Source of the DNA: Octopus sinensis
Lineage: Eukaryota
Assembly: GCF_006345805.1 (NCBI RefSeq)
Contig: NC_043000.1
Location: forward strand, 100,316,001-100,380,000
DNA length: 64,000 nucleotides
Direction: 5' to 3'
Shown: piece by piece, positions 2,945-50,716 of the stretch
How the letters are laid out: the number at the start of each line of letters is the position of its first letter
How positions within the stretch are numbered: the first letter of the stretch is position 1
Notes under the pieces: generated by a model
Database searches by the model: none
What the model saw: only the letters and a program-made list of their open reading frames with translations
Told to the model about the DNA's origin: nothing
Translations under genes and position numbers: made by a program

Positions 2945-3215
2945 TTCTTTCGGCTATACAAAACCTTCACTTTTTGACCCATTACTTTATGGCCTAGATC
3001 TCTCTGTAATATTCCACTTGATAGTGTGTGGAATATTGTTGTCCATCAGGTCTCAGATGACTTGCCAGCAGTTTTATTATGTGCTTAAAAGAAAACTGAT
3101 GGTTGGTGTATCTTTGTTTGAAATCACTTTTGCTCAGTTCAATACATTTTTCTTTTGTTTCCCTTATTTGGTGGAACAAAAGTGACCTCAGTTTCATAGA
3201 TAACTGAGCTAGGTT
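2945..3215 (-). mobile_element. Penelope-like element GIY-YIG endonuclease remnant
   Basis: Across frameshifts: SSVIYETEVT..KMY / IELSKSDFKQRYTNHQFSFKH / TIKWNITERSRP*SNGSK. This matches the recalled PLE pattern VIY.A.V..YIG..E..FK.RY.NH..SF..IKW.I..RA.PY.NG.K. Confidence 0.8.
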
Positions 3216-4894
3216 GATTTGTTTGAATAAAATTTCTCAAGGCAGTCCCTCAATATGACCACCGTCTAATGACCGAAGCATAAAAGAATATTAACAATAC
3301 TCTTCATTAAATGCATTAGAGGAGCATAATCTTTATCCACCTTTCCCTTTAAATTTTCCTCTCAAGTATGAAACTTGAAGTAGTTCATACATAATTTGTA
3401 TATTCATTAAATAAATTGCTGGATTCAGTGCTTTTTTGCCGATCTTACCAACAAGCAAACAGTACACCATATATATAGGTCATTGTTGACTTAAACCACA
3501 ATTGGTTCGACTGACTGGTTGTAAGTCAATCTGGTTGTAAGTTGGCCTATAAGCCTACATAGATTTGTTTTATATTTTTACATTCGTAAGGTACGTTCTC
3601 ACAGCATTATGTATTATACTTTTATACTGGCATTAGTCAAAAATTTTGGAGTCTCAAGCAGTCATCTTATAAACAAATACAAGGTTGCCTCGACATCTCC
3701 ACGACAGGATAGTCATCCAACACAGTGGCAATCAATAACCAAATGTAGGGGAAGCATTTATTAGCTGACATCATCTATAGTCAGGTTAATCTCTAAGAAA
3801 TTAAGCCCATTAGATTTCAAATGGACTATTTATTATTGCTGCCAGGAGCTGGCATGTCAATCATCATAAAATCGATCAGTTGTAAGTTGATGACAACCTG
3901 TATATGTATATGATAAGTTTCTTTCTGATTCCTTTGACCGAGTTCCCTCACAAGACTTTGATCCCCCAGAAGTTATAGAACTTACCAAAAGGTGCTACAT
4001 AGTGGGAGTGAACTCAAAGCCATATGATGAAGAAGCAAACTTCTTAACTTACACTGCCATACCTGAGTGTTATAATCTCTAAGTCTTACAAATCACTTAA
4101 AATTTATTGTTTTATTTCTTGACCCTTTCTTATGCCTTCATTATGACACCTCATCATATGCTGTGAATATCTAGGCTAATCTGTCATAGTCATTGCAATC
4201 ACCATTAATTAGGGTTTTATAATGATTTTCCTTTTGTAAACAAATTTTGAGGGTCATTGCATATTCAAATCTCCAAGCTTGTGAAATCTTTTGCAAAACT
4301 GAAAGCTTATGGAAAAAAGTGAAATTGTCATATTTTTGTTAAATGATGTTGTACTAGCTAAAATAATATACATATTCATTTCTTTTCCCTGTAATTCTCT
4401 GAAAAGCCAAAGATTGCACGACTGTCATCTGTTTGAAACCATCCCATGCTGAGGAATATTGCAGTTATCCTTAATGGAAAGCAATCCCAATTTGGAAACA
4501 GGAACTATGTTCTTAAGATACTACTGTTTCACCTTGTCACATTTCATCAACTATGTTGCACATGCTATCCTAATTTTGCTTATTGAGATCCCATCCAATC
4601 CAGTTTTCTTTCCTGGTCCAAGAGAACTGACGTTTTTCAGCTCATCCACAGTGAATTAATCAATGCTTAATCCTAATAAATATTAACCTTAATCATTAAT
4701 TTAACCACAAATCTTGATGGAAAACTTTTGTTATACCCCTGCTTGAAATTTGGTGGCAACACACCCAAAACTACAACCACTGAGTGATAGATGTATCTAT
4801 CCATGTCACTCAAGATTGGAAGGTATCTTGGTAAATCCTTATAGTACATGAATCATGCTGACACCTGGTTTCAAAGATCTTCCCTCTAAGTATT

Positions 4895-5439: not shown

Positions 5440-6329
5440 GCTCTGTGTGTGTAGCTGCTAGAATAAGAATAGCCTAGGCAAAGTTCAGAGAGTTCCTACC
5501 TCTGCTGGTGACAAAGGGCCTCTTGCTCAGAGTAAAAGGTAGACCATATGACGCATGTGTGCAAACAGCCATGGGCTGTGACTGCTGAGGACATGCGTAA
5601 GCTTGCAAGGAATGAAGCTAATATGCTCCGCTGGATGTGTAATGTCAGTGTGCATACACGACAGAGTGTAAGCGCCTTCAGAGAAAAGTTGGACATAAGA
5701 AGCATCAGATGTGGTGTGCAAGAGAGATGACTGCACTGGTATGATCATGTGTTGCATATGGATGAGGACAGCTGTGTGAAAAAGTGTCACACTTTAGCAG
5801 TAGAGGGAACCTGTGGAAGAGGTAGACCCAGAAAGACCTGGGATGAAGTGGTGAAGCACAACCGTCGAATGTTGGACCTCATAGAGGCAATGCCAAGTGA
5901 CTGAGACCTTTGGAGACATGCTGTGCTTGAGAAGACCCGGCAAGCCAAGTGAGACCGTAACCATGGCCAGGCCAGTGCAGCATAACCAGCCTATTAAAGA
6001 ATACCCTTCCATCATTTGCCAATAAACTGTGCTTGCAAAGACCTGTTTAGCCAAGTGAAGTCATTGTCATTGCCAATGACAGTACTGCCTGATTGGCACC
6101 TGTACTGGTGGCATGTAAAAAGCACCATTCAAGCGTGGTCAATGCCAGTACCGGCTGACTGGCCCTCGTGCCAGTGGCATGTAAAAAGTACCCACTACAC
6201 TCTCAGAGTGGTTGGCCTTAGGAAGGGCATCCAGATGTAGAAACTTTGCCAGATCAGATTAGAGCCTGGTGCAGCCTTCAGTCAAACCATCCAACCCATG
6301 CCAGCATGGAAAGTGGACGTTGAACAAAA

Positions 6330-8001: not shown

Positions 8002-8029
8002 CTATGGGATATTAATATTAGTAGAATAC

Positions 8030-8225
8030 AGGGCAATGAATTGGCAGAATCATTAGCATGCTGGGCAAAATGCTTTGTGGCATTTCATCTGTCCTCACAT
8101 TCTAAGTTCAAATTCTGCTAAGGTTAGCTTTGCCTTTCATCTTTTCACTGGGGTCAATGTAATCAACTTACTCCTTCCTCAAAAAACTGATGACCTTGTG
8201 CTAAAATTTGAAACCAATATTAGTA
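8030..8225 (+). mobile_element. SINE family A, decayed
   Basis: ttggcagaatcattagcatgctgggcaaaatgc...gttcaaattctgctaaggttagctttgcctttcatc matches the family A head and core. Confidence 0.8.
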
Positions 8226-8874
8226 GAAATTGATAAAGGAAAATAGTTGAAGTTTTTGATTATAAACATTGAATTAAATTAAATTAGACACTTTAGAGAC
8301 ACAAATCCATGATCAAAAAATCTGCATGTAACTGCCCATGGAATGGAAACAATATATCTTGCAATCCAGACAACTATACTATCCTTTGGAACAAAGCAAG
8401 CATGCACACCCTCTCCAAACAACTTAGTGCCCTAAAACCATACATTTCTGAGAAACATACTTATCTTATCTCCCACCCGAGAGACATTCATGTTCTGTTG
8501 TCTAAATTCATAAGATTTAAACATTAGAGTGATTATACTTCCTGCCCCAAACTCCTAAATCAACCAACCCTATAAGGAAGGGAAAAGCTGCTTACTCCCA
8601 AACTCCTCCAGCAGGAGTTTGCTTAACTCCCTGAATGCCATTGTGTAGAATGTGTTTGCAAAACCCTCTAGATGCATAGTCAAGAATAAGTGTTTTCCTA
8701 GTGCCCTAATTGTCAAGAAAGAGTGTTTGCATAACTCCCTAAACATCACTAAATAGAAAGTCGCTGTAAATCCCACCATCTTAATTTATAATTTATGAAG
8801 CTACTAAAGATACCAAAATGAAGCAAGTGAAAGAATTTTGATTAAAATGGTATTTCAAATGTTACCAATAACTA

Positions 8875-9092
8875 TTTCAAATTTTTGGCACAAGCTCAGC
8901 AGATTTAGTGGGATGGGAACGATCGATTACATCAACCCCAGAACTTGACTGGTACTTTATTTTATTGAATACACAAAGATGAAAAGCAGAGTTGACTTTG
9001 GCAACATTTGAACTCAGACTATAAAGAGCTGGAAGAAATGTTGTTAAGCATTTAGTCCAGTCCAGTGTGCTAATGATTCTGCCAACAGGAAA
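8875..9092 (-). mobile_element. SINE family A, decayed
   Basis: Reverse complement of the family A core: ggtactttattttattga...gatgaaaagcagagttgact...tttgaactcaga...tgctaatgattctgccaa. Confidence 0.8.
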
Positions 9093-9167
9093 AGCCATTT
9101 TGGTATTCCAGAAATGAAAAACCAGAATTGGACATTTTTCAAAAACATTATTTGATGATCCAAATAA

Positions 9168-11439: not shown

Positions 11440-12234
11440 TAAGATTAAAATAATTCCCTTTCAAAAATTAAGTTTGATAAGTTATAAACCAAAAATGTAT
11501 TATATACTAAAGTTAAGTTTATCCTAAAACAATTCACCACTTACATTAATTTTAGTAAAAATAAGCATCACAGATGTACATACACACTCCTTTATAATGT
11601 TATTTTTTATGAAATACACAACCTGTTTATTTCAGTTGAATTTAAAATTAATCAAGAATTTAGAGTAAAATAACTAAGTTTAATATTATTATTATTATAT
11701 GTTTGATGTTTTCTTGGTAATTCTACAAGCTGACTCCAAGTCTCACCCAGAGACCTCAAGAGACAACAAGTTAGAAGTTCAAGCTGGTGTTATGCCTAGG
11801 GTGTCATAAGTTTGGTTTTGCACATAGTATTACTCTAGAGAATGTTTAAGAAAATTATAAGTTTATTTTAAAATTTGAGATTACGTAGACAGAATTTTAT
11901 GTAGGATATGGGCAGTTCCTATGAATATTATCTTTTGAATTTCTGCCATTTTGGGGTTTCCTGGTATCTGATGAGCTAGATAGGAATCAGCCCTTTTGCT
12001 GTCATTCCTAGGGCACCTATGACAAACAGGTATTGTTTTAGTATTGAGGTGTTACATTTTGCCAGTTTGTACTTCAAGCTCTTTATACTTGCTCAGTTTT
12101 TAGTAGGTCTTGACAGATACATTTATGTCGATTGGGACAGTCATATCAATGACGGGGCAATATATTTTTCTGGCCTATTCGCATCTTTCTTTTTGTCAGT
12201 TGTTTGTTTGTTTGTTGTTGTGATTGTTGTAAAG

Positions 12235-13050
12235 AAGGCAGCAAGCTGGCAGAATCATTAACACGCTGGATGAAATGCTTAGTAGTATTTCACCCGTCAG
12301 TACGTTCTGAGTTCAAATTCTGCCAAGGTCAACTTTGCCTTTTATCCTTTCAGGGTCGATAAAATAAGTACCAGTTGGACACCAGGGGCAATGGAATCAA
12401 CTCATCCCAACCTCCCTGCAAGCTGCCCCAGTGGCAAAAATTTGAAATAATTATTATCAGTCTGCTGAGTGGTTGGTGTTAGGAAGGGCAGACATCTATA
12501 AAAATCCCACCAAAACAGTTACAGAAGTCTGGTGCAGCCTTCTGCCTGGCCAGTTCTTATCAAACCATCCCACCCATGTCAGCACGGAAGGCGGACGTTA
12601 AACGATGATGATTATTATTATCAAGAATGTAGTAAGCTGGCAGAATCGTTAGCGTGCCGGACAAAATGTTTAGTGGTGTTTTGCCTGTCGCTATCTTCTG
12701 AGTTCAAATTCCGCTGAGGTCAACTTTACCTTTCATCTTTTCAGGATTGATAAATTAAGTACCAGTTGAACACTGGGGTTGATGTAACTGACTTATCCCA
12801 TCCCCTAAAATTGTTGCCCTTGTGGCAAAATTTGAAACTATTATTATTATCATTAAGCGAAGACAATGAACTGGCATAACTAAGACAAAATGCTTAGTGG
12901 CATTACGTTCTGAGTTCAGATTCCACTGAGGTCAACTTTGACTTTTCTCCTTTTGGGGTTAATAAAGTATCATTGAAGCAGTGGGGTAATTGAGCATCCC
13001 ACTTCCTTGAACTTGTTAGCCTTGTGCCAAACATTGAAATTCATATTATT
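12235..13050 (+). mobile_element. Cluster of three SINE A copies plus an RTE 3'-tail fragment (12460-12612)
   Basis: SINE heads at ~12237, ~12632 and ~12860, each with gttcaaatt/gttcagatt and ctttgcctt.catcc. The RTE tail reads ggttggtgttaggaagggca...ggacgttaaacgatgatgat. Confidence 0.85.
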
Positions 13051-13500
13051 ATGATCCCATTACCTTTAAATGGAGTCTGGACAAATTTCTTCAAGGAATA
13101 CCGGATAAGCCACCCATACCTGGATACAACTCACTCAACAAGAACTCACTACTTGAATGGACCATAAACAAAACTTGACTTAAACAGGATTTAGATAATC
13201 CTATCAGGTGGTGCTATTAAGTTAGACATGGCCTGGACCAATCTTTGGTCGAAACATATCTAAGTTTTATTAAGTTAGTGTCTGAGCATAAAATTATGAT
13301 GCAAGGTTTAAACTTAAATTAGTTGCATTTTCATCATCATCATCGTTTAACGTCCGCTATCCATGCTAGCATGGGTTGGACGGTTCAACTGGGGTCTGGC
13401 AAGCCCGAAGGCTGCACCAGGCCAGTCAGATCTGGCAGTGTTTCTACAGCTGGATGCCCTTCCTAACGCCAACCACTCCGAGAGTGTAGTGGGTGATTTT

Positions 13501-13780
13501 ATGTGCCACCGACACAGGTGCCAGACGAGGCTGGCAGACGGCCACGCTCGGATGGTGTTTTTTATGTGCCACCGACACAGGTGCCAGACGAGGCTGGCTG
13601 ACGGCCACGCTCGGATGGTGTTTTCTTATGTGTCACCGACACAGGTGCCAGACGGGGCTGGCGGACGGCCACGCTCGGATGGTGTTTGTTACGTGCCCTC
13701 AGCACGGAGGCCAGTCGTTGCGGTACTGGCTACGATCACGTTCGGATGGTTTTCTTATGTGCCACCGGCACTGGTACCAC
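13501..13780 (-). repeat. 63-66-bp tandem repeat (~4.4 units) in the RTE 3'UTR
   Basis: Units start at 13501, 13564, 13628, ~13691 and ~13757. Consensus atgtgccaccgacacaggtgccagacgaggctggcagacggccacgctcggatggtgttttt. Confidence 0.95.
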
Positions 13781-13952: not shown

Positions 13953-16067
13953 CTAGTCTTGCCGGGTCTTCTCACGCACAGCATACTTCCATAGGTCTCG
14001 GTCTCTAGTCATTTCCATGGTGAGACCTAACGTCCGAAGGTCGTGCTTCACCACTTCGTCCCAGGTTTTCCTGGGTCTACCTCTTCCACGGGTTCCCTCA
14101 ACTGCTAGGGATTGGCACTTTCTCACACACCTATCTTCATCCATTCTCGCCACATGACCATACCAGCGCAATCGTCTCTCTTGCACACAACAACTGATGC
14201 TTCTTAGGTACAACATTTCTCTCAAGGTACTAACGCTCTGTCGAGTAAGTACACTGACATTACACATCCATCGGAGCATACTGGCTTCGTTCCTCACAAG
14301 CTTACGCATGTCCTCAGCAGTCACGGCCCATGTTTCACTGCCATGTAGCATAGCTGTTCGTACACATGCATCATACAGTCTGCCTTTTACTCTGAGCGAG
14401 AGGCCTTTAGTCACCAGCAGAGGTAAGAGCTCCCTAAACTTTGCCCAGGCTATTCTTATTCTAGCAGTTACACTTTCAGCGCACCCGCCCCCACTACTGA
14501 CTTGGTCACCTAGATAGCGGAAGCTATCAACTACTTCTAGTTTTTCCCCCCGGAAAGTGACGGAAGTTGTTTTCTGCATATTTCCGGAGGTCAATGCTCC
14601 AGAGCATCTGCCACATACAAAAACTATCTTCCCAGTTAGCCTACCTTTGACATTGCTGCACCTCTTATGTGTCCATAGCTTACACTGGGTACATCTTATA
14701 GAGTTTCTACCTACACCTTTTCTACAGATCGAGCAGGGCCATCTTCCTGAGGATATTTGTGGATTTTCTAACTTTCTACTTATTAGTACTTTGGTTTTAG
14801 CTAGGTTGACTCTAAGGCCCCTCGATTCTAAACCCTCCTTCCACACCTGGAACTTCTCCTCCAGTTCTGATAGTGACTCAGCGATTAGAGCGAGGTCGTC
14901 AGCATAGAGGAGCTCCCAGGGGCAACCTGTCTTGAATTCCTCCACAATTGCCTGGAGGACTATGATAAATAGGAGGGGGCTGAGTACTGAACCCTGGTGG
15001 ACCCCAACCTCTACCTTGAATTCTTCTGTGTACATGCTGCCAACTCTAACCTTACTTACGGCATCTCTGTACATGGCTTGCACAGCCCTCACCAGCCATT
15101 CATCTATCCCTAGTTTCCTCATTGGCCACCAGATGAGGGAACGGGGGACCCTATCAAAGGCTTTCGCCATGTCAACGAAAGCCAGGTACAGGGGCTTATC
15201 TTTGGCTAGGTATTTCTCCTGCAGCTGCCTTACCAGGAATATAGCATCAGTGGTGCTTTTCCCTGGGACAAACCCAAACTGCATCTCATCTAAACTAACT
15301 CTCTCTCTAATTAGTTGGGCTATGACCCTCTCCGTAACCTTCATTACCTGATCCAACAGCTTGATACCTCTGTAATTATTTGTATCCAGGGCATCACCTT
15401 TACCTTTGTAGCAGTTGACTAGTATGCTGCTACACCAGTCATTGGGTATGACTCCTTCGTGTATCACCTGGTTGACTATACAGGTGACTAGGTTATAGCC
15501 GACACTGCCAGATATTTTGAGCATCTCTGCAGTAATTCCTGATGGGCCTGGGGCTTTCCCTGTCTTCATGCTTCTAATTGCCTTAGCTACCACGGAACTA
15601 TCAACTCGGATAGCTGGTCCCTCTGTTGGGTCAACATTCGGCAGACTCTCTTTATCCCATTCATTTTCTTTATTCAGCAACCTTTCATAGTGGCATCTCC
15701 AAACCTCTCTCTTTGCATCCTCATTTAGCGCAAGTGAACCATCATCCATGCGAACACACTTCTCTCCTACCACATCACGATTCTCTCTCACACACTGTCT
15801 TGCAACACGAAATACCTCAAGTCTTTCATCCTCACGGCTCAGAACATTGGCAAATTTTTTCTTATCCGCTTCCCCTCTGGCTAAATAAACCTGTCTCCTA
15901 GCTTCCCTTTTGGCTGTCTGATACAATTCCCTGCTACCACCGTTCTTCCAGTCCTTCCAAGCTTGTCTCTTTTGTCTAATAGCCCTGTCAACCACAGTGT
16001 TCCACCACCATGTTACTCTGGGTCGAGATGGTACTTTGCTCCATCCACAGATCTGGTCAGTGGCTGT
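13953..16067 (-). CDS. RTE reverse transcriptase ORF (truncated; frame open for ~704 codons, no native start)
   Basis: Motifs GKAPGPSGI, NYRGIKLL, QFGFVPGKSTTDAI, FVDMAKAFDRV, GVHQGSVLSPLLF, LYADDLAL, FRYLG, LRWYGHV and RGRGRPRKTW. The frame extends 24 codons beyond the tracked ORF start (TATDQICGWSKVPSRPRVTWWWNT). Confidence 0.96.
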   Translation of the reverse strand, partial: TATDQICGWSKVPSRPRVTWWWNTVVDRAIRQKRQAWKDWKNGGSRELYQTAKREARRQVYLARGEADKKKFANVLSREDERLEVFRVARQCVRENRDVVGEKCVRMDDGSLALNEDAKREVWRCHYERLLNKENEWDKESLPNVDPTEGPAIRVDSSVVAKAIRSMKTGKAPGPSGITAEMLKISGSVGYNLVTCIVNQVIHEGVIPNDWCSSILVNCYKGKGDALDTNNYRGIKLLDQVMKVTERVIAQLIRERVSLDEMQFGFVPGKSTTDAIFLVRQLQEKYLAKDKPLYLAFVDMAKAFDRVPRSLIWWPMRKLGIDEWLVRAVQAMYRDAVSKVRVGSMYTEEFKVEVGVHQGSVLSPLLFIIVLQAIVEEFKTGCPWELLYADDLALIAESLSELEEKFQVWKEGLESRGLRVNLAKTKVLISRKLENPQISSGRWPCSICRKGVGRNSIRCTQCKLWTHKRCSNVKGRLTGKIVFVCGRCSGALTSGNMQKTTSVTFRGEKLEVVDSFRYLGDQVSSGGGCAESVTARIRIAWAKFRELLPLLVTKGLSLRVKGRLYDACVRTAMLHGSETWAVTAEDMRKLVRNEASMLRWMCNVSVLTRQSVSTLREMLYLRSISCCVQERRLRWYGHVARMDEDRCVRKCQSLAVEGTRGRGRPRKTWDEVVKHDLRTLGLTMEMTRDRDLWKYAVREKTRQD

Positions 16068-16460: not shown

Positions 16461-16640
16461 TCGTGGCCAATGACAGTACAACCTGATTGGCACCCATGCC
16501 AGTGGCATGTTAAAAGCACCATTTGAGCATGATCATCGCTAGTGCCACCTGACTGGCTTCTGTGCCAGAGGCATGTAAAAAACACCATTCAAGCATGGAC
16601 GTTGCCAATGCCAGTGGCACATAAAAAGCACCATTTGAAA
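16461..16640 (+). mobile_element. Isolated RTE 3'UTR repeat units
   Basis: gtggccaatgacagtacaacctgattggcacc...gtggcatgttaaaagcaccatt units match the 6070-6185 and 13501-13780 units. Confidence 0.75.
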
Positions 16641-16800
16641 CTTCTCAAACCCTGCATTACCCACTTGCAACAAAGACACCACACTGATTCTATGGACAAA
16701 GGATTCAAAAGCATTCCCCAATGGGAATATGCTAATCTTCTCTCTTTCAACAGTAAGAAAACACAAATGCTACACATACAAAGAAAACAACATTGTATTA

Positions 16801-16935
16801 TCCTGTCCAGTACGAGAGGAACCGCAGGATCAGAGCAACAGTTTGCACGCTCGCTTGATAGAGTGGTGGTGCCAGGCTACCTCTGAGTGATAACGGCTGA
16901 ACGCCTCTAAGCTGGAACTGTAGCCGGACCTGAGT
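16801..16935 (+). rRNA. 28S (LSU) rRNA-derived fragment covering the sarcin-ricin loop and following helices; not a gene
   Basis: AGTACGAGAGGAAC (SRL) at 16809-16822 and the eukaryotic CTGAACGCCTCTAAG at 16897-16911, correctly spaced. The intervening helices still base-pair. Confidence 0.93.
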
Positions 16936-16937
16936 TT

Positions 16938-17169
16938 AAGGTGGCGAGCTGGTAGAAACGTTAGCACACCAAGCGAAATGCTTAGCGGTATTTCGTCTGC
17001 CATTACATTCTGAGTTGAAATTCCGCCAAGGTCAACTTTGCCTTTCATCCTTTTGGGGTCGATAAATTAAGTACCAGTTACGCACTGGGGTCGATCTAAT
17101 CGACTTAACCCCTTTGTCTGTCCTTGTTTGTCCTCTCTATGTTTAGCCCCTTGAGGGCAATAAAGAAAT
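16938..17169 (+). mobile_element. SINE family A, full length, fused 3' of the rRNA fragment
   Basis: Runs from aaggtggcgagctggtagaaacgttagcac through ctttgcctttcatcc to gcaataaagaaat. The TSD aagaaaacaacattgtatta lies at 16781-16800 and 17170-17189. Confidence 0.95.
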
Positions 17170-20100
17170 AAGAAAACAACATTGTATTACACCTCTCTTG
17201 CACATGAGCAACGCACAACCAGAACCTTTGCAATCACACAAATTATTGGGCCACAATATCAATGAGGATTACTCCTAGCAAAAAACATTCTTTACATAGC
17301 TAGTACTGAATCCCAATGACTGACCCTTCTCTCCAAGGCTACAAGATACTTTATCTGCCAACAATATTGACATTTCCGCAAAAATCACATGAAAACCACA
17401 ATGAAGAATAGCTCCCCATCAGGGATGGTGCTACTGCTATGCACACAGACATGTTAAAACCATAACATCTGCAAAAAATCCACCTCAATGTGTGGCATAT
17501 ATTATTTGAAGACACTGTCCAGCCTCTGGCCCACAGGCATTTTGTCATCTCTACCTTTTCTGCTTGCTCTATAATGGACTCTAGTCTTCAGTGTTGTCTG
17601 GACTCATGCCAACGACACCCAGGCATTCCCGATCTACCCATTTCTTCTCCTCTTATCACACCCTTTGCACCAAACCCAGTTCACCAAGCCCTGCATTAGC
17701 CATAATACCTAGTCCTTCCTTTACAGAATAATGGCCCTCTGGAATTCGTTCTGTACTCATGTCTTTCCCACAAGGGTAACTTGCAATAATTCAAAGGAAA
17801 CATAAATAGATTCAATCTCTATGATATCAGAGGGTTTGCAAAGACCATAGGTACTCCTTTTTTTCTGAACTCAGTAAAGAAAAAGCAATGAGAATTTTAC
17901 AATTGAATTCTTATGTGTGGTAACAAATATCAATTGCAATTCATAATTATCCTAAATTGCATTTCTAAAGGCTATTTAAATTGTATTCATTTTGATTCAT
18001 ATTGTTTACTGTTTCAGTTGCAATTTGAACTCAAATATAACTGCATATGCAAAAAGAGAAAATTAAATCAGATTGTTAAATAATATTTTTAATCTGGACC
18101 ATTATGATGAGAAAGACAGGATAATGCTGTCTAGGAAAAACTTTTGTACCATAAATCAAGATGGCATGGTTGGAATGCTTTTGATCAAAGATTTTCTCAC
18201 AAAACTGGATAAAGACTAACTGTAGTGAAATTTTTAATAAATGGCACGCGACCGCACACACACACACACACACACATACACGCACGCATGCGAAAGTAAA
18301 TCAAACCGTTAAATAATATTCTTTAAAATGTCTGCTTTGGACTGTGGCATCATTGGTGTACTCGCAAAAACTTGAGTGCAGTTTACTGTCGTAAAAAAAG
18401 TGAAAGTAAATTGCCCTAAAAAAATGAAAGTAAATTGCGATACAATCCGGAAGTGACGACAATGACATCCCATAATTTCATGTAAACACTATCTGACATA
18501 AAGAAAGTATAGAACGTGCATTTATTTCATAAAACATGAAAACCGTACATATATATATTTTTAATGACAATTTACTCTCATGGTAAACTTGATGCTAACC
18601 AGGGAACGTAATTAAAAAAAAAAAAACAGTTCTACCAAGGATCACAGATGGAGAAAAACTAGAGAGTTCCTTCTTGACTTTGCTCTCAGCTAAGATCGGT
18701 TATGTGAACGTAGGCACTATGTTTTCTGTGAAAAAGTGTGATTAGGAAGCGAGTGCCTTTCTATTTCAGTATGTAAAGAGCGAAGGTAATCAATAATGTT
18801 AGTTTCCTTATTTGGTCCTACAAACGATTGTCTGCTTTATTTGGAAACTGTTAATCAATTTGTTTTTGTGATAAACATGAAACAAAAGTAGACATATATA
18901 TTCAGAGAAAGAAAGAGAAGAAATAAATCTCAGAAAAAGACGTCCTGGAATTTGTAAATAAGAAAGACAGGAGAAAGAGAAGTACAGGGAGAGAAACAGA
19001 GAAATAAATATAAAAAAAAAAGGAAAGAGAGAGCGAAATATATATTGAAGATGTCACTTACTTCCTGTGAGAATGAATCGTTTATGAATCACCAATCAGA
19101 ATGTTGTTGATGCTGACGATTAAGCAGACGATAAACAAGGTTTTGCTAGTTAAACTTCATCAATAAATGTATTCAGTTTGTTTATATAATTTGTTTTCCT
19201 TAAAATTAAGCCAACATATGCAAATCATGGAGAGCAAAACTATAGAATCGGAAGTAGAATTAAAGCGCATGTGCAAAATCAAAATGAGGCTGATCAGCCT
19301 CGATTTCGATTTTCTTGTATTATAATGTGTATTAATATGCATATTCTCCGAGCTGTAAGTTAATGACATTCCAGTAAAATACTGAACTTTATTTAATTGG
19401 ATTGTTAGACTCAGTTAAGGACAACAGATAGCTGTCTTGTTTTCAGACGATATCATTTGCTCGATCGACAAACTCCGATGCTTACACGTTCTAAATTGCA
19501 TGAGTTCAAAGATATCAGTTCCTATGACTTTCAACAAATTCACGAAATCAGTTCAGAAGAACGCATGAAAAAGCATTTCACCAATTATGGCACCAAAAGA
19601 TTATTTGCCATTGAAATAACAGCAAGGAGACATCGTTTTCGGTGCCATGCATTCCTTTAAAACAATACTACAACGAAAGAACTGAAAGACTAAGATGACT
19701 GCACGCTTACAAACATTGTTGGATCATTCGCGCTTTCATTTTGTACGCCTGCAAAACGTTCGATATATGAGTTCACGAATGCATTTTCCAAGTGCGTTAA
19801 TTATATTGCTTCTTTCTAGGTCTGATCGTAGGTATTTTCATCGTAGCCATCCTGTCTGCTGCTTTTTCTGACAGATCAAGAAATTCATATCCAAAAAGTT
19901 TTTCTTTGCTGTTGTTGCTTTGCCTCAGTTGCCTATGATCAAAACTTTTCATACTATCTTCATTTTTTTTCTATAAGAGACGGACAACATTATTTAATGT
20001 GCCCTTCCTCTAAACATTTCTCGCTGATGGAAGGACTAGGCTGTTTTCTAATTTATTTTATTAACGAAAACTAATCTACACCTGTGAGTGTACTTCTGAT

Positions 20101-23790: not shown

Positions 23791-23834
23791 GAAAGCAAAC
23801 AGTACTTGATTTATCGACCTCAAAAGGCTGAAAA

Positions 23835-24045
23835 GAAGAGCTGGTAGAGTCCTTAGCATGCCGAGCAAAATGCTTAGCAGCATTTCGACCATCTTTATGT
23901 TATGAGTTCAAATTTCGTTGAGGTTGACTTTGCCTTTCATCCTTTCGGGGTCGATAAAATAAGTACCAGTCGAGGACGGTGGTCGATGTAATTACCTTAC
24001 CAACTCCCTCGAAAATACTGGTTTTGTGCCAAAATTTGAAACCAT
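23835..24045 (+). mobile_element. SINE family A
   Basis: gagctggtagagtccttagcatgccgagcaaaatgcttagc...ctttgcctttcatcctttcggggtcgataaaataagtaccag. Confidence 0.85.
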
Positions 24046-24539
24046 TATCGATGTTGATGTAACTCCACTTGATTTATTACAATCTTTTTTTTTTCTCTTT
24101 TTTTGTTAAATCTAGTTCAGCTCAGATTTAGCTGAGCACCAATCAAATGCATTCAAGCTTGTATATCCTATGTGTTTTTAGTAAAACAAAATAGATAAAT
24201 AAAACTGTATCTATAATTGCATTATCCAGTGCATCATTTTTATTTTAGATGATAGGAAATCTCAAGAAGAAGAAGAAGAAGAAGAGGGAAAAGGTAGAGG
24301 AAAAGAAAGACAAGAAAGTTACATAAATGATGACATGGGAAGAAAAAATTCTTCTGCAAAACAAATGTCTGTGTAGTATAATTATATATTAGAGCATACA
24401 ATATACAATGTAATTATTATGTTTGCAGAAACATAATAATAATAGTTTTGAAAAGGATCTTGTTTAGAGTTAATCAATAAATGGTTGTGTTTTCACATCT
24501 TCACAGATTTTCTTTGGGCCAATTTTACCTATCGCGTAC

Positions 24540-27790: not shown

Positions 27791-28171
27791 AAAGATAATT
27801 TTATTTTCATTATAGACGCAGTTGAGAGTGAAATGTGTAAGAAAAGACTTGTGGTAATGTGAATTTAAGTGCTATTTACTAATGTATATTTTATTAGGAA
27901 GAAAATGTGTTGTTAATTAGAGCAAACAGAATTTGTGCTAACTTGTGTTAATTAATTGTTGGTAACAGAAATTAAGCTTCTACTGTATCTCAAATAAATG
28001 TTTACAGTATTATGTTTTATATCACTGAATTTACAACACAATTTTATTACAATACAATTTAATTAGGTTAAGAATTGTTTTATTTTTACTAAAGTTATGT
28101 TTCTTTGATTTTTCTTTTTACTATATACAGAATATCAATGATAATATTGATGCATATATACAGACATTTCA

Positions 28172-28834
28172 AGGCGGCGAGCTGACAGAAACGTTAGCAC
28201 GCCGGGCGAAATGCTAAGCCGTATTTCGTCTGCCGTTACAAACTGTGCTTATTTGTCCCTTCTGTGTTTAGCCCCTTGTGGGTAGTAAAGAAATAGGTAT
28301 ATCGTCTGCCGCTACGTTCTGAGTTCAAATTCCGCCGAGGTCGACTTTGCCATTCATCCTTTCCGGGTCGATTAAATAAGTACCAGTTACGCACTGGGGT
28401 CGATATAATCGACTTAATCCGTTTGTCTGTCCTTGTTTGTCCTCTCTGTGTATAGCCCTTTGTGGGCAGTAAAGAAATTGGTATTTCGTCTACCGTTACG
28501 CTCTGAGTTCAAATTCCGCCGAGGTCGACTTTACCTTTCATCCTTTCGGGGTCGATTAAATAAGTACCAGTTACGCACTGGGGTCGATATAATCGACTTA
28601 ATCCGTTTGTCTGTCCTTGTTTGTCCCCTCTGTGTATAGCCCCTTGTGGGCAGTAAAGAAATTGGTATTTCGTCTACCGTTACGCTCTGAGTTCAAATTC
28701 CGCCGAGGTCGACTTTACCTTTCATCCTTTCGGGGTCGATTAAATAAGTACCAGTTACGCACTAGGATCGATATCATCGACTTAATCCATTTGTTTGTCC
28801 CCTCTATGTTTAGCCCCTTGTGGGTAATAAGGAA
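28172..28834 (+). mobile_element. SINE A multimer (one head plus ~184-bp head-less units) inside one 18-bp TSD
   Basis: The period is 184 bp (28433 to 28617). The TSD atatatacagacatttca lies at 28154-28171 and 28835-28852. Confidence 0.93.
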
Positions 28835-29071
28835 ATATATACAGACATTTCATGGGTTTTGTAAGGTGTTATGGTAATTTAAAGTGTATGACAAGATATC
28901 TGGAAAATTCAGTTAACCGATAACACTCCGGTCCCAGTGGTACCAGACAGGGAGTTCACTATGTGTGTGTAGTAAGACTGCAATTGCAACGGTTACTAAT
29001 CGATGCAGTAGAAACATTTGTAGGTCTATAAAAATGAATTAAAGGTAATGTTAATACTATTTCGCAATAAT

Positions 29072-38139: not shown

Positions 38140-38336
38140 TTCATATTTCTTTACTGCCCACAAGGGGCTAAACATAGAGGGGACAAACAAGGACAGACAA
38201 ACAGATTAAGTCGATTACATCGACCCCAGTGCGTAACTGGTACTTAATTTATCGACCCCGAAAGGATGAACGGCAAAGTGGACCTCGGCGGAATTTGAAC
38301 TCAGAACGTAACGGCAGACGAAATACTCGCCGCCTT
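38140..38336 (-). mobile_element. SINE family A with an internal head deletion, inserted in (CACT)n
   Basis: atttctttactgcccacaaggggctaaac...gaatttgaactcagaacgtaacggcagacgaaatactcgccgcc. Confidence 0.92.
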
Positions 38337-38939
38337 AACTCATTCACTCACTCACACATGCATACACACTAGCGCACACTCATGCACTCATATGCATCAA
38401 CGCATACATATGCGTGTAAAATCTGTATGCAGACTGTTAGGTGCATATATGTGTGCGTATGTAAGTACCTGTATATGTCTGTGCGCGTGCATACATGCAG
38501 ATGTGTATACATATATGTGTGTGCGTTCATGCGTGTGTGTACTCAACAAAACATGGCTAAAATTGAAATTGTAATAATCAATGCAAGGGAAATAATTCTG
38601 TAACAATTATCTGAATTATTTCCCTTGCTACTTTTCAAATTCTACGTATAAATGACGAGAGAAGCAAATATGTATTAATTTTACAATTTAAAAGGAGAGT
38701 CACTGATAAAAAGAATTGTAACTGAGTGAAATGGAAGGGGTTGGCAACTATACCACGGCTGTCATTCAGAGAGAAGCATTTTAACTTCTCATTTACCTCT
38801 GTCATCAGCATCTCTCCCCTTCCTTTTCTCTCTCTCACTCTGTTTTATTCTTTGTCTCACTCTTCTTTTCTCTCACTCACTCACTCACCCAGTCTTTCTT
38901 TCTTTCTCTCTTTTTCTCTCACACACACACACACGAATA

Positions 38940-41354: not shown

Positions 41355-41884
41355 CGTTGACCAGAGTAAAAATGTGGTGAATTAACTACTGCATGCTTTT
41401 GAAATTGTGCATGAGCTTGCAGACCATATTTTAAATCTAAAAGGAACCAAACTATACCAGCAAAATTCTTAATACTCTGAAACCACACGGTCTATCACAT
41501 CACAGACTCGTACTGAAGAAAATATCCTCAATTATTCTTTGCAGAAAATTAGTTACTCCAAGGTGATGCCATGGGATAAGTGTAGAATATCTGATGATCT
41601 AATATTGTCCTGCGAAATTTCAGATAAACATGCCATACGACTTTTATGTTTTATGTATATATTTCTTTTTCAAAGATTTCTTCGAATTTCTGTTTTGAAC
41701 TCCAGAGATAACAATTTTACAAAATTACAATGTATTTACGTTCTGAGTCCAAATTCCGCTGAGATCGACTTTGCCTTTCATTGTTTCTGGTTCGATAAAT
41801 TAAGTACCAGTAATGCAATGGAGTCGATGCAATCGACTAGTCTCCTCCCCCAAATTTCGGGCCTTGTGCCTATAGTAGAAAGGA

Positions 41885-41905
41885 TTATTATTATTATTAT
41901 TATTA

Positions 41906-41936
<31 letters not shown>

Positions 41937-42690
41937 GCATTTGCACAGCTTCTAACGCTGGAAATGTACTACGGTGTCAGCTGTTCAATACCATTGAACT
42001 AAGGTAACACCTCTTTATTTTTCGAGCACCTCCCTGAGTATCTTAGCGGTTCGAAGCAGTGTTGTTTTCTGCAAGTGCTCCACTCGTATTGCAGCCCCTA
42101 TTTGTTCCACGTACTTCTCGAGATTTTTGCTCACTGTTCCTAGAGCTCCGACAATTATTGGTACTACTGCTGCCTTTTTCATCAACCACAACTGCTTAAC
42201 TTCCCAAGCTAACCTGTCATATCTCTCGTCTTTTCTTTCTTCCTTATCGCATACCTTCTTGTCAGCTGGGCATGCTATATCTATGATCCAGCATAGTTTG
42301 CTTTCCTTCTTAATTAAAACTATGTCTGGCTTCCTATTCTCTATCTCATGGTCGCACTGAATCATAAAATCCCACAGGATCTTTGCATTATCATTTTCGA
42401 TGATGCCTTAGCAATTTCTTTTTTGAGAGCCCAAACTCGATCTTAACATCATTGGAGAAAATTCTCACAGACTGGACTAGGCTGTCTAGTTTTTACTCAG
42501 TTTTTGTGAATAGCTTCAGGTGGTCCATGAATAGCGGCTTCAGGACAAAATTCTTTACTACAGTTCGCTTGCATTTAGCGTCTCTCTCTATACTCACTTG
42601 TCCTCCTTTTCTTGTTTTAGACTCTTTATACCAGTATGACCGACGAGACACACATTGTTTTTTATTATATATAAGATTATCAAGGTGTTC
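41885..42690 (-). mobile_element. R4/Dong-clade RLE non-LTR retrotransposon, internally deleted, ending in (TAA)n
   Basis: RT block LFMDHLKLFTKTE*KLDSLVQSVRIFSNDVKIEFGLSK joined to the RLE block ENDNAKILWDFMIQCDHEIENRKPDIVLIKKESKLCWIIDIACP..VVPIIVGALG..LQKTTLLRTAKILR. A (TAA)n tract lies at 41885-41934. Confidence 0.88.
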
Positions 42691-42699
42691 AGCTGACAA

Positions 42700-42893
42700 A
42701 ATCGTTTGCTCCCCGGGCAAAATCCTTAGCGACATTTCGTCCGTCCATATGTTCTGATTTCAAATTCCGCCGACGTTGACTTTGCCTTTCATCCTTTCGA
42801 GGTCGATGAATTGAGGACCAGTGAAACACTGGGGTCGATGTAATCGACAATTCTCTCCCCCAAAACGGTTGCCCTTGTGGCAAAATTTGAAAC

Positions 42894-42895
<2 letters not shown>
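42700..42895 (+). mobile_element. SINE family A
   Basis: ccgggcaaaatccttagcgacatttcgtcc...ctttgcctttcatcctttcgaggtcgat. Confidence 0.85.
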
Positions 42896-42930
<35 letters not shown>

Positions 42931-44133: not shown

Positions 44134-44830
44134 TGAGAGCTGGAAGAATCTTTAGCATGCCGGGTGAAATGCTTAACGGTATTTCGTCTGTCGTTACGTT
44201 GTGAGTTCAAATTCCGCCGAGGTTGACTTTGCCTTTCATCCTTTCGGGGTCGATAAATTAAGTACCAGTTTCGCACTGGGGTCGATGTAATCGACTTAAT
44301 ACCTATGTCTGTCCTTGTTTGTCCCCTCTATGTTTAGCCCCTTGTGGGTAATAAAGAAATAGGTATTTCATCTGCCGTTACGTTCTGAGTTCAAATTCTG
44401 CCGAGGTCGACTTTGCTTTTCATCCTTTCGGGGTCGATAAATTAAGTACCAGTTGCGCACTGGGTCGTTATAATCCGTTTGTCTGTCCTTGTTTGTCTCC
44501 TCTGTGTTTAGCCCCTTGCGGGTAGTAAAGAAATAGGTATTTCGTCTGCCACTACGTTCTGAGTTCAAATTCCGCCGAGGTCGACTTTGCCCTTCACCCT
44601 TTCGGGGTCGGTTAAATAAGTACCAGTTACGCACTGGGGTTGATATAATCGACTTAATCCGTTTGTCTGTCCTTGTTCGTCCCCTCTGTGTATAGCCCCT
44701 TGTAGGTAGTAAAGAAATAGGTATTTCGTCCGTCTTTACGTTTTGAATTCAAATTCCGCTGAGGTCTGATCGACGTGATCGATTTACCTCCTCCACAAAT
44801 TTCAGGCCTTGTACCTATAGTAGAAAGGAT
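44134..44830 (+). mobile_element. SINE A multimer (one head plus ~3 head-less units)
   Basis: Junction aaagaaata|ggtatttc at ~44355, ~44532 and ~44715. Confidence 0.9.
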
Positions 44831-49990: not shown

Positions 49991-50172
49991 AATATTGCAA
50001 TGGATTTAGAACTTGCAAAACCTTTAAGTAGCTCCTGCAGTTTCTGCGTGGAGCAAAGCATCTCTGATGTTTATATCATCTGTTGTTGTTGGCAGTGCAA
50101 CTGATAGAGTTTTTCCTCATCAAAAATTAATGCACGCTGTTTAGTGATTAGGTTGTTAGTAATGTAATGAAT

Positions 50173-50587
50173 GGCGGCGAGCTGGCAGAAACGTTAGCAC
50201 GCCGACCGAAATGCTTAGCGGTATTTCGTCTGTCTTTACGTTCTGAGTTCAAATTCCGCCGAGGTCGACTTTGCCTTTCATCCTTTCGGGGTCGATAAAT
50301 TAAGTACCAGTTACGTACTGGGATCGATGTAATCGACTTAATCCGTTTGTCTGTCCTTGTTTGTCCTCTCTGTGTTTAGCCCCTTGTGGGTAGTAAAGAA
50401 ACAGGTATTTCGTCTGCTGCTACGTTCTGAGTTCAACTTCCGCCGATTTCGACTTTGCCTTTCATCCTTTCGAGGTCGATAAATTAAGTATCAGTTACCC
50501 ACTGGGGTCGATGTAATCGACTTAATCCCTTTGTCTGTCCTTGTTTGTCTCCTCTATGTTTAGCCCCTTATGGCCAATAAAGAAATA
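50173..50587 (+). mobile_element. SINE A dimer inside one 15-bp TSD
   Basis: TSD agtaatgt(a/t)atgaat at 50158-50172 and 50588-50602. The second unit starts at ggtatttcgtctg. Confidence 0.93.
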
Positions 50588-50716
50588 AGTAATGTTATGA
50601 ATCGTACATTTCCATATTTGAAAATTATTCGCGGATGTATTTGTTTATGTTTTTGAGGTTATTGTCACTACTGCTGAGGCATGTGCCTTTTGATCTTATA
50701 TCTATCTTTTGTATCT

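What the first reader, a model, noticed from the sequence alone, without database searches (positions are those of the whole stretch)
16781..17189. 28S rRNA fragment and SINE co-inserted as one chimeric retrocopy
Seen: a perfect 20-bp TSD (aagaaaacaacattgtatta) brackets 135 bp of LSU rRNA (starting at the base of the sarcin-ricin helix) fused directly to a complete SINE A. The pair interrupts an older CR1-like LINE. Established: LINE RT template switching makes 5'-cellular-RNA/3'-retroposon chimeras (such as U6-L1), and a 28S-derived SINE class (SINE28) is known in mammals. Inference: either a one-off switch from SINE RNA onto 28S rRNA or a member of an undescribed rRNA-headed SINE subfamily.
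Basis: partly seen in the sequence, partly recalled or inferred. Interest (0 to 1): 0.85.

Follow-up and report, generated by a model that had tools for sequence, protein, structure and literature searches.

The report
One-off 28S rRNA–SINE chimeric retrocopy
A 135-base piece of large-subunit ribosomal RNA and a complete SINE were pasted into this genome together in a single retrotransposition event; this is a real but already described by-product of LINE reverse transcriptase, not a new kind of mobile element.

Summary
An exact 20-bp direct repeat (16781-16800 and 17170-17189) brackets a 369-bp insert. Its first ~135 bp are eukaryotic LSU rRNA (Rfam 71 bits, gathering score 50; model 3022-3144 of 3401, helices 95-97 starting at the base of the sarcin-ricin stem). 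The remaining ~233 bp are a full-length copy of the window's young SINE, same strand, ending in the normal SINE tail. Neither part has its own duplication. So this was one insertion event, not two, and not an assembly join.

The best reading is target-primed reverse transcription of a SINE RNA to its true 5' end, then a template switch onto 28S rRNA. Other SINE insertions in the window are irregular multimers inside single duplications, so the partner enzyme seems prone to switching.

None of about 10 other SINE heads in the window, nor one external copy, carries rRNA. The SINE's B-box lies downstream of the rRNA piece and is mutated. That argues against a heritable rRNA-headed subfamily, but the host genome could not be reached for a genome-wide junction search.

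28S/LINE-1 chimeras in primates and cellular-RNA/SINE chimeras in a fungus are published. This is a new member of a known kind, of modest interest.

The parts
16781..16800 (.). Left copy of the 20-bp target-site duplication AAGAAAACAACATTGTATTA. Its last A (16800) also aligns to the first rRNA model position, giving 1 nt of microhomology at the 5' junction.
16801..16935 (+). Fragment of eukaryotic large-subunit (28S-type) rRNA covering helices 95 (sarcin-ricin loop), 96 and 97. 16800-16921 is matched by Rfam. 16922-16930 (AGCCGGA) resembles the (A/G)TGCCA(A/G)A that follows H97 in real rDNAs. The last ~6-9 nt (CCTGAGTT) are unassigned: either the variable region after H97 or untemplated filler.
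   Evidence: 71.1 bits, E 1e-16; alignment to rDNA contigs; only rRNA-like stretch in the window
16936..17169 (+). Full-length copy of the young 'A' SINE subfamily. The head starts at (T)AAGGTGGCGAGCTGG and the tail ends in AATAAAGAAAT. It is 91.9% identical to the local consensus; 8 of its 19 substitutions are CpG transitions.
17012..17024 (+). B-box-like Pol III promoter motif of the SINE, GAGTTGAAATTCC. The consensus reads GAGTTCAAATTCC, and the conserved C is changed to G at 17017. The motif lies ~210 nt downstream of the start of the chimera.
   Evidence: difference list; sequence
17170..17189 (.). Right copy of the 20-bp target-site duplication. Its first bases, AAGAAA, repeat the SINE's terminal AAGAAA(T), as expected if the nicked target annealed to the RNA tail.
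16602..16780 (+). Left flank of the target. It is single-copy in the window and reads as a possible decayed LINE RT C-terminal frame (..WEYANLLSFNSKKTQMLHIQRK..) that continues across the empty site.
   Evidence: frame, uniqueness; no significant family match
17190..17696 (+). Right flank of the target. The same possible LINE remnant continues here (..KLLGHNINEDYS; ..IHLNVWHILFEDTVQPLAHR..), with frameshifts.

Best explanation
This is a single target-primed reverse transcription event. A LINE endonuclease nicked the target at ...ACATACA/AAGAAAAC. The freed bottom-strand end (...TTTTCTT-3') annealed to the SINE RNA tail (..AAAGAAAU) and primed cDNA synthesis. The reverse transcriptase copied a genuine SINE-length RNA to its real 5' end. 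Instead of finishing, it switched template onto a 28S rRNA molecule or fragment just 3' of helix 97. It then copied ~135 nt back through helices 97, 96 and 95 and stopped at the base of the sarcin-ricin stem. The cDNA end was joined to the other side of a 20-bp staggered break, with 1 nt of microhomology. The product is a dead-on-arrival, one-off chimeric retrocopy with no function. Shown: single-event insertion, the identity and orientation of both parts, and the boundaries. Inferred: the template switch itself, the order of events and the one-off status.
For: One exact 20-bp TSD brackets both parts, and chance expectation is 0. There is no separate TSD for the rRNA or the SINE alone. The rRNA identity scores above Rfam's gathering score. 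The SINE part is complete to within 0-3 nt of the 5' end defined by three TSD-bounded copies and by L011, which is what end-to-end template jumping predicts. Both parts are in sense orientation, like 83% of the published 28S/LINE-1 chimeras. Other insertions of the same SINE in this window are multi-template products inside a single TSD. A28 is a head fragment, a tail fragment and three 183-bp units within the 18-bp TSD ATATATACAGACATTTCA. A50 is a full SINE plus one unit within a 15-bp TSD. This fits a partner RT that switches templates readily. Template jumping is an established property of non-LTR RTs (papers). It is also the accepted explanation for cellular-RNA/SINE/LINE chimeras and for SINE module exchange in molluscs. 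For one-off status: 0 of about 10 other SINE heads in the window and 0 of 1 external copy have rRNA upstream; the B-box lies downstream of the rRNA piece and is mutated.
Against: The final DNA structure cannot distinguish a template switch during reverse transcription from a pre-formed chimeric RNA made by ligation or read-through. The host's own 28S sequence could not be obtained. As a result, the exact donor position, any junction microhomology and the status of the last 6-9 nt are unknown. The sample for 'no other copies' is only 64 kb plus 543 bp. The SINE multimers could also come from multimeric source genes or from later DNA-level duplication rather than template jumps.
Confidence: 0.6

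Rival explanations
1. 5' transduction. A source SINE copy sits inside an rDNA unit or an older rRNA pseudogene, just 3' of helix 97. A read-through transcript (Pol I or Pol II) ending at the SINE tail was retrotransposed and 5'-truncated at the sarcin-ricin stem.
For: This gives exactly the structure observed: a single TSD, sense orientation and a direct junction. The SINE part carries 8 CpG transitions relative to consensus, while the SRL and H97 loops of the rRNA part and the TSD are unmutated. That hints that the SINE template came from an old genomic copy, not a master gene. TEs inside rDNA are common (review).
Against: It needs a transcript that ends precisely at the SINE tail even though rRNA continues downstream in an rDNA unit. 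It also needs two rare circumstances rather than one. No such source locus could be looked for. The contrast in decay is statistically weak (about 32 ultra-conserved rRNA positions and 20 TSD positions).
Confidence: 0.17
2. RNA-RNA ligation before reverse transcription. An rRNA fragment ending in a 2',3'-cyclic phosphate was ligated (RtcB-type) to a SINE RNA, and the chimeric RNA was then retrotransposed through the SINE tail.
For: This mechanism is demonstrated for U6/LINE-1 chimeras (PMC6789731). It is offered as an alternative for 28S/LINE-1 chimeras. rRNA is cleaved by endonucleases that leave cyclic phosphates (own knowledge).
Against: RtcB ligation needs a 5'-OH acceptor. Replacing the 5'-OH with a 5' triphosphate strongly reduced ligation. 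A SINE RNA that is intact to its first nucleotide is expected to be a primary Pol III transcript with a 5' triphosphate (own knowledge). Ligation products typically involve 5'-truncated acceptors, whereas here the SINE is complete.
Confidence: 0.1
3. This is a member, or the founder, of an undescribed SINE subfamily whose head is a 28S rRNA fragment, propagating as a unit.
For: SINE heads derived from rRNA exist (5S SINEs; SINE28). Module acquisition by template switching is how new SINEs are thought to arise. The genome-wide test could not be run.
Against: No second copy turned up among about 10 other SINE heads in the window, in L011, or anywhere in the window by BLAST with the fragment or with whole rDNAs. 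No predicted protein among 5.8 billion clusters shares words with the open frame across the rRNA piece. That is weak evidence, because the host is absent from that collection. The Pol III boxes lie downstream of the rRNA piece, so transcripts from the internal promoter would start ~135 nt too late to carry it (inference from type-2 promoter geometry). The B-box C is mutated.
Confidence: 0.08
4. This is not a single event: either two independent neighbouring insertions or an assembly chimera.
For: Read support cannot be checked here.
Against: A perfect 20-bp duplication encloses the pair, and there is no internal duplication. A misassembly would not create a TSD whose removal restores one continuous open frame across the empty site.
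Confidence: 0.03

Closest known systems
[quoted passage not shown]
   Same: A 28S rRNA fragment of 50-482 nt sits in sense orientation at the 5' side of a retroposon. The pair is inserted in one event with one TSD, and is attributed to template switching or RNA ligation.
   Different: Here the 3' partner is a complete SINE rather than a 5'-truncated L1. The host is a non-mammalian animal, and the RT is not L1 (the SINE tail has no poly-A). The rRNA region is helices 95-97, about 260-380 model positions from the 3' end. It was not established whether this overlaps the human hotspot at 3636-4115 of 5035.
WEIRD / Mg-SINE / MGL chimeric retrogenes of Magnaporthe grisea (PMC2104539)
   Same: Copies of a cellular non-coding RNA are fused directly to a SINE and/or LINE copy and flanked by short direct repeats. 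They are explained by single or double template jumps of a LINE RT outside mammals.
   Different: The 5' RNA there is a specific abundant transcript, and switching occurs at preferred sites, giving 33 bipartite elements. Here there is one locus, and the 5' RNA is rRNA.
U6/LINE-1 chimeric pseudogenes (PMC4476161; PMC6789731)
   Same: The architecture is the same: small cellular RNA, then retroposon, inside one TSD.
   Different: U6 is full length and carries a 2',3'-cyclic phosphate that allows RtcB ligation to 5'-truncated L1 RNA. Here the cellular RNA is an internal fragment of a long RNA, and the retroposon is not truncated.
SINE28 (PMC4994717)
   Same: It is a retroposed sequence containing LSU rRNA.
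   Different: [quoted passage not shown] Here the fragment is internal, is attached to an unrelated tRNA-type SINE, and is seen once.
Template jumping of the R2 and related non-LTR reverse transcriptases
   Same: This is the enzymatic activity invoked here: after reaching the 5' end of one RNA, the RT continues on another (papers listed).
   Different: The evidence for R2 is biochemical. The RT that mobilises this SINE was not identified, because no LINE in the window shares the SINE's 3' tail.

Membership tests
LINE-RT-mediated chimeric retrocopy (cellular RNA 5' / retroposon 3') | One target-site duplication encloses both parts | tested here: met
   Exact 20-bp repeat at 16781-16800 and 17170-17189, with 0 expected by chance
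LINE-RT-mediated chimeric retrocopy (cellular RNA 5' / retroposon 3') | No duplication or target DNA at the internal junction; the parts are fused directly | tested here: met
   No shared k-mer of 5 or more between the left flank and the junction, or between the junction and the right flank. At most 6-9 unassigned nt lie between the recognisable rRNA and the SINE head.
LINE-RT-mediated chimeric retrocopy (cellular RNA 5' / retroposon 3') | The 5' part is a copy of a cellular RNA; the 3' part ends with the retroposon's own 3' tail at the TSD | tested here: met
   LSU_rRNA_eukarya at 71.1 bits, above the gathering score of 50. The tail AATAAAGAAAT is the same as in other copies.
LINE-RT-mediated chimeric retrocopy (cellular RNA 5' / retroposon 3') | Empty site exists in a related genome or haplotype; reads span the junction | not testable with these tools
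   The host genome and its relatives are not in any searchable collection
SINE28 | [quoted passage not shown] | tested here: not met
   The fragment covers model positions 3022-3144 of 3401 and stops about 250 positions before the 3' end. The definition is from PMC4994717.
SINE28 | Multiple dispersed copies with individual TSDs; Pol III transcription from within the rRNA-derived part | tested here: inconclusive
   Only one copy in 64 kb. The genome-wide count and transcription could not be tested.
New composite SINE subfamily with an rRNA head | Two or more loci share the same rRNA/SINE junction but have different flanks and TSDs | tested here: inconclusive
   0 of about 10 other heads in the window and 0 of 1 external copy. 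The sample is far too small to exclude a low-copy family.
New composite SINE subfamily with an rRNA head | A promoter able to transcribe the whole unit, head included | tested here: not met
   The only recognisable Pol III element, a B-box-like motif at 17012-17024, is ~210 nt downstream of the unit's start and carries a C>G change at the conserved C. No tRNA or other Pol III gene model matches the insert. Promoter activity itself was not assayed.
tRNA-derived SINE (for the 3' part) | The head is recognisably tRNA-like | tested here: inconclusive
   ARAGORN finds no tRNA in the window, and Rfam lists no tRNA hit at E<=10 in 16700-17300. Only a B-box-like GAGTTCAAATTCC appears in the consensus.

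The most novel reading that the evidence does not exclude
The locus is a snapshot of SINE head acquisition. In this reading it is the founder or a member of a low-copy, lineage-specific SINE subfamily whose 5' module is helices 95-97 of 28S rRNA. It would be propagated from read-through or cryptic-promoter transcripts and made by an RT that also produces the multimeric SINE insertions seen in the window.
Probability: 0.08. Interest if true: 0.6.

Novelty: new member of a known kind. Interest (0 to 1): 0.3.

Why it matters
The locus is a clean, TSD-certified example showing that the reverse transcriptase mobilising this invertebrate-type SINE can fuse a cellular RNA to a complete SINE. This is the process proposed to create new composite SINEs. 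It extends 28S-rRNA chimeras, so far reported with primate LINE-1, to a SINE partner and a different LINE system. The multimeric SINE insertions in the same window add to this, suggesting that this genome would be good material for studying template switching in vivo. For annotation, it is an rRNA-like hit that should be masked as a retropseudogene, not treated as rDNA.

Tried and rejected
Attempts to obtain the host's own 28S:
- I searched 5.8 billion protein clusters with the open minus-strand frame across the rRNA piece, hoping for spurious ORFs on rDNA contigs. It returned no candidates.
- An exact-pattern scan of metagenome contigs with the H97 string returned 9 contigs. All are unrelated protist rDNAs, about 60% identical.
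- Scans of genome contigs and viral contigs with rRNA, junction and SINE strings all returned 0.

Attempts to pull more host genome:
- The exact RT ORF is not on record.
- RT homologues are at most 74% identical and come from many animals.
- A SINE-frame protein search gave a single 543-bp ENA contig.
- The family-versus-one-off test could therefore not be run genome-wide.

Other checks:
- Whole-window Rfam scans, in both gathering and E-value modes, missed even the confirmed LSU piece because of their filters. They returned only low-complexity miRNA-like hits. I replaced them with BLAST of whole rDNA units against the window.
- Thermodynamic folding of the rRNA piece is unremarkable (z = -0.83) and was not used as evidence.
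- The idea that the site lies in the APE region of the neighbouring RT LINE was rejected, because that copy ends at ~16064.
- A U6-like 15-mer just left of the TSD (Rfam 16.2 bits, E 0.25) was judged to be chance.
- The contrast between the decayed SINE part and the intact rRNA loops and TSD was considered as a dating argument. It is too weak statistically to rely on.
Full report
**Observation**

- The 20-mer AAGAAAACAACATTGTATTA occurs exactly twice in the 64-kb window, at 16781-16800 and 17170-17189. It occurs nowhere else even with two mismatches allowed, and 100 dinucleotide-preserving shuffles gave none.
- The repeats enclose a 369-bp insert, 16801-17169.

**The rRNA part**

- A focused Rfam search gives LSU_rRNA_eukarya at 16800-16921 on the + strand: 71.1 bits against a gathering score of 50, E 1.1e-16, model positions 3022-3144 of 3401.
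- The alignment covers helix 95 with an intact sarcin-ricin loop (AGUACGAGAGGAAC), helix 96 with many pairs kept by changes on both sides, and helix 97 with an intact CUGAACGCCUCUAAG loop. The fragment does start at the base of the sarcin-ricin stem.
- The match includes 16800, the last A of the TSD, so there is 1 nt of overlap at the 5' junction.
- Whole-window Rfam runs missed this hit because of their speed filters.
- As a substitute, I blasted complete rDNA units fetched from metagenomes against the window. The only rRNA-like stretch anywhere is 16882-16918.
- After helix 97 those rDNAs read (A/G)TGCCA(A/G)A, and the window reads GTAGCCGGA. rRNA-like sequence therefore probably continues to about 16930.
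- The last 6-9 nt (CCTGAGTT) cannot be assigned without the host's 28S.
- Minimum-free-energy folding of the piece is unremarkable (z = -0.83) and adds nothing.

**The SINE part**

- BLAST of the insert against the window finds about 20 other pieces of the same SINE. All start at insert position 135 or later, and none contains the rRNA part.
- There are two subfamilies: a young 'A' type, to which the chimera belongs, and an older type with a different tail followed by (ATT)n.
- The SINE's true 5' end is fixed by copies with their own duplications: 28172 (18-bp TSD), 50173 (15-bp TSD, one mismatch) and the minus-strand copy at 38145-38337. It is also fixed by one external copy on a 543-bp ENA metagenome contig, L011. 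All begin at (T/A)AGGCGG[C/T]GAGCTGG.
- In the chimera the SINE therefore starts at 16936-16939 and is complete. The non-SINE part is 135-138 bp.
- The SINE ends in the family's normal tail, AATAAAGAAAT, directly at the right TSD.
- It is 91.9% identical to the local A consensus. Eight of its 19 substitutions are CpG transitions. One changes the conserved C of the B-box-like motif (GAGTTCAAATTCC to GAGTTGAAATTCC, 17017).
- Neither ARAGORN nor Rfam recognises a tRNA in the head, so the tRNA origin of this SINE is only suggested by that motif.

**One event or two**

No k-mer of five or more bases is shared between the left flank and the internal junction, or between the junction and the right flank. 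Neither part has its own duplication. Removing the insert and one TSD copy restores a continuous open frame across the site. An assembly join would not produce that, nor a perfect TSD. I conclude that the rRNA piece and the SINE entered together.

**The target**

- The 680-codon RT ORF next door (13953-15995, minus strand; RVT_1 plus a weak PHD hit below Pfam's cut-off) belongs to a 5'-truncated LINE copy that ends at about 16064. It does not reach the site.
- The flanks themselves are single-copy in the window. On the + strand they read as ...WEYANLLSFNSKKTQMLHIQRKQHCITPLL...KLLGHNINEDYS, and further on ...IHLNVWHILFEDTVQPLAHR.
- These motifs occur in the order and spacing of the region after the RT core of many LINEs.
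- Pfam finds nothing. The best blastp hit to 120 LINE proteins has E 0.04, though it falls at the right position in the protein. An HMM of that family is not significant.
- A decayed LINE is plausible, but its clade is unknown.

**Mechanism**

- The TSD begins with AAGAAA, the same bases that end the SINE (..AAAGAAAT). This is expected if the nicked bottom strand (...TTTTCTT-3') annealed to the RNA tail to prime reverse transcription.
- The enzyme copied a SINE RNA to its real first nucleotide, which points to a SINE-length Pol III-type transcript as the first template. It then continued on 28S rRNA.
- Template jumping at the 5' end of a template is an established activity of non-LTR reverse transcriptases (papers). 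It is also the accepted explanation for chimeric retrogenes and for module exchange among mollusc SINEs.
- The window adds circumstantial support. Array 28172-28834 consists of a head fragment, a tail fragment and three 183-bp units, all inside one 18-bp TSD. Array 50173-50586 is a full SINE plus one unit inside one 15-bp TSD. So single insertion events of this SINE often contain several template pieces.
- Two rivals give the same final DNA. RtcB-type ligation of an rRNA fragment to the SINE RNA before reverse transcription is shown for U6/L1. It is less likely here, because that reaction needs a 5'-OH acceptor, whereas an uncut SINE RNA should carry a 5' triphosphate.
- The other rival is 5' transduction from a SINE copy lying in an rDNA unit or an rRNA pseudogene. 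The CpG-decayed state of the SINE part, against unmutated rRNA loops and TSD, hints that the SINE template came from an old genomic copy. The numbers are too small to weigh that.

**One-off or family**

- In the window, none of the about 10 other SINE heads is preceded by rRNA, nor is the head in L011.
- A type-2 Pol III promoter starts transcription a short distance upstream of its A box. The rRNA piece, 135 nt upstream of the SINE, would therefore not be included in transcripts driven by the SINE's own promoter. In this copy the B-box is also damaged.
- These points favour a dead-on-arrival single event.
- The decisive genome-wide junction search could not be done, because the host genome is not represented in the collections available. 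The open frame across the rRNA piece has no word-sharing protein among 5.8 billion clusters. The SINE frame has just one. The exact RT ORF is not on record. DNA pattern scans of the metagenome, prokaryote-genome and viral collections gave only unrelated protist rDNA or nothing.

**Comparison with what is known**

- Chimeras of a cellular RNA with a SINE and/or a LINE, flanked by direct repeats, were described in Magnaporthe grisea.
- U6/L1 is the classic case.
- SINE28 is different. [quoted passage not shown] The fragment here is internal and is attached to an unrelated SINE, so it is not SINE28.
- What is new here is the combination: a 28S fragment with a complete SINE, a non-L1 system with a specific tail and no poly-A, and a non-mammalian host.

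**Verdict**

The interpretation as one chimeric retrocopy is supported. A template switch is the most likely mechanism (about 0.6). A heritable rRNA-headed subfamily is unlikely (about 0.08) but not excluded. This is a new member of a known kind, and I score interest at about 0.3.

Noticed in passing
window 28154-28852; 50158-50602; 44137-44766: Young SINE-A copies occur as irregular multimers. A 183/184-bp unit (from GGTATTTCG, 51 nt into the SINE, to the tail AAAGAAAT) is repeated head-to-tail. Array 28172-28834 (head fragment, tail fragment and 3 units) lies inside one 18-bp TSD, ATATATACAGACATTTCA. Array 50173-50586 (full SINE plus 1 unit) lies inside one 15-bp TSD with 1 mismatch. Whole multimers were therefore inserted in single events, through serial template jumps or multimeric source genes. 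The unit start lies in the loop/3' arm of a CGAAAT..ATTTCG hairpin.
   Followed up: partly
window 38145-38337 (-): This SINE-A copy has its own TSD (inside a GAGT/GAAT-rich microsatellite). The first ~11 nt of the head (AAGGCGGCGAG) are joined directly to the 183-bp unit (TATTTCGTCTG...). It is either an internal deletion or a jump at the same breakpoint as the multimers.
   Followed up: partly
window 13497-13779 and 16488-16634: A ~63-bp tandem repeat (3-4 units) lies at the 3' side of the 5'-truncated RT LINE. It recurs in inverted orientation and CpG-decayed form (70-80% identity) beyond the LINE's truncated 5' end, and once more at 6094-6138. Its relation to the LINE (3' UTR repeats of a second, inverted copy?) was not resolved.
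   Followed up: partly
window 13953-16064 (-): This is a 5'-truncated LINE copy with an intact 680-codon RT frame plus a weak PHD-finger hit below Pfam's cut-off. Full-length relatives (~1050 aa, with APE, RT and PHD domains) are 50-56% identical and occur in contigs from very diverse sources, including a catfish gene model and a lucinid-clam symbiont MAG. The closest (74%) is in ENA metagenome project XUSH22-1.
   Followed up: partly
L001 and L011 (ENA ERZ23499376, ERZ23499442; project XUSH22-1): The closest relative of the window's LINE and the only external copy of its SINE both come from metagenome assemblies of one project. That project evidently contains DNA of the host or a close relative, and its sample records could identify the organism.
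   Followed up: no
window 16723-16779 (-): A U6 snRNA-like stretch with a 15-nt exact match to the ACAGAGA-box region (AGAGAAGATTAGCAT) lies just left of the TSD. Rfam gives U6 16.2 bits, E 0.25. It sits within the LINE-like reading frame of the flank and is judged a chance match.
   Followed up: partly
window 8010-8260, 8860-9115, 12205-12860, 23805-24060, 41640-41900, 42655-42910: An older SINE subfamily shares the head and body of SINE-A. It has a different 3' end (..GCCCTTGTGGCAAAATTTGAAAC) followed by (ATT)n, which suggests a tail swap and therefore a change of LINE partner between subfamilies.
   Followed up: no
window 1-64000 (method note): Rfam in gathering mode on the whole window reported nothing, although the LSU fragment scores 71 bits (gathering 50) when a 600-nt stretch is searched. 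Short rRNA fragments are lost by the speed filters in large searches.
   Followed up: yes
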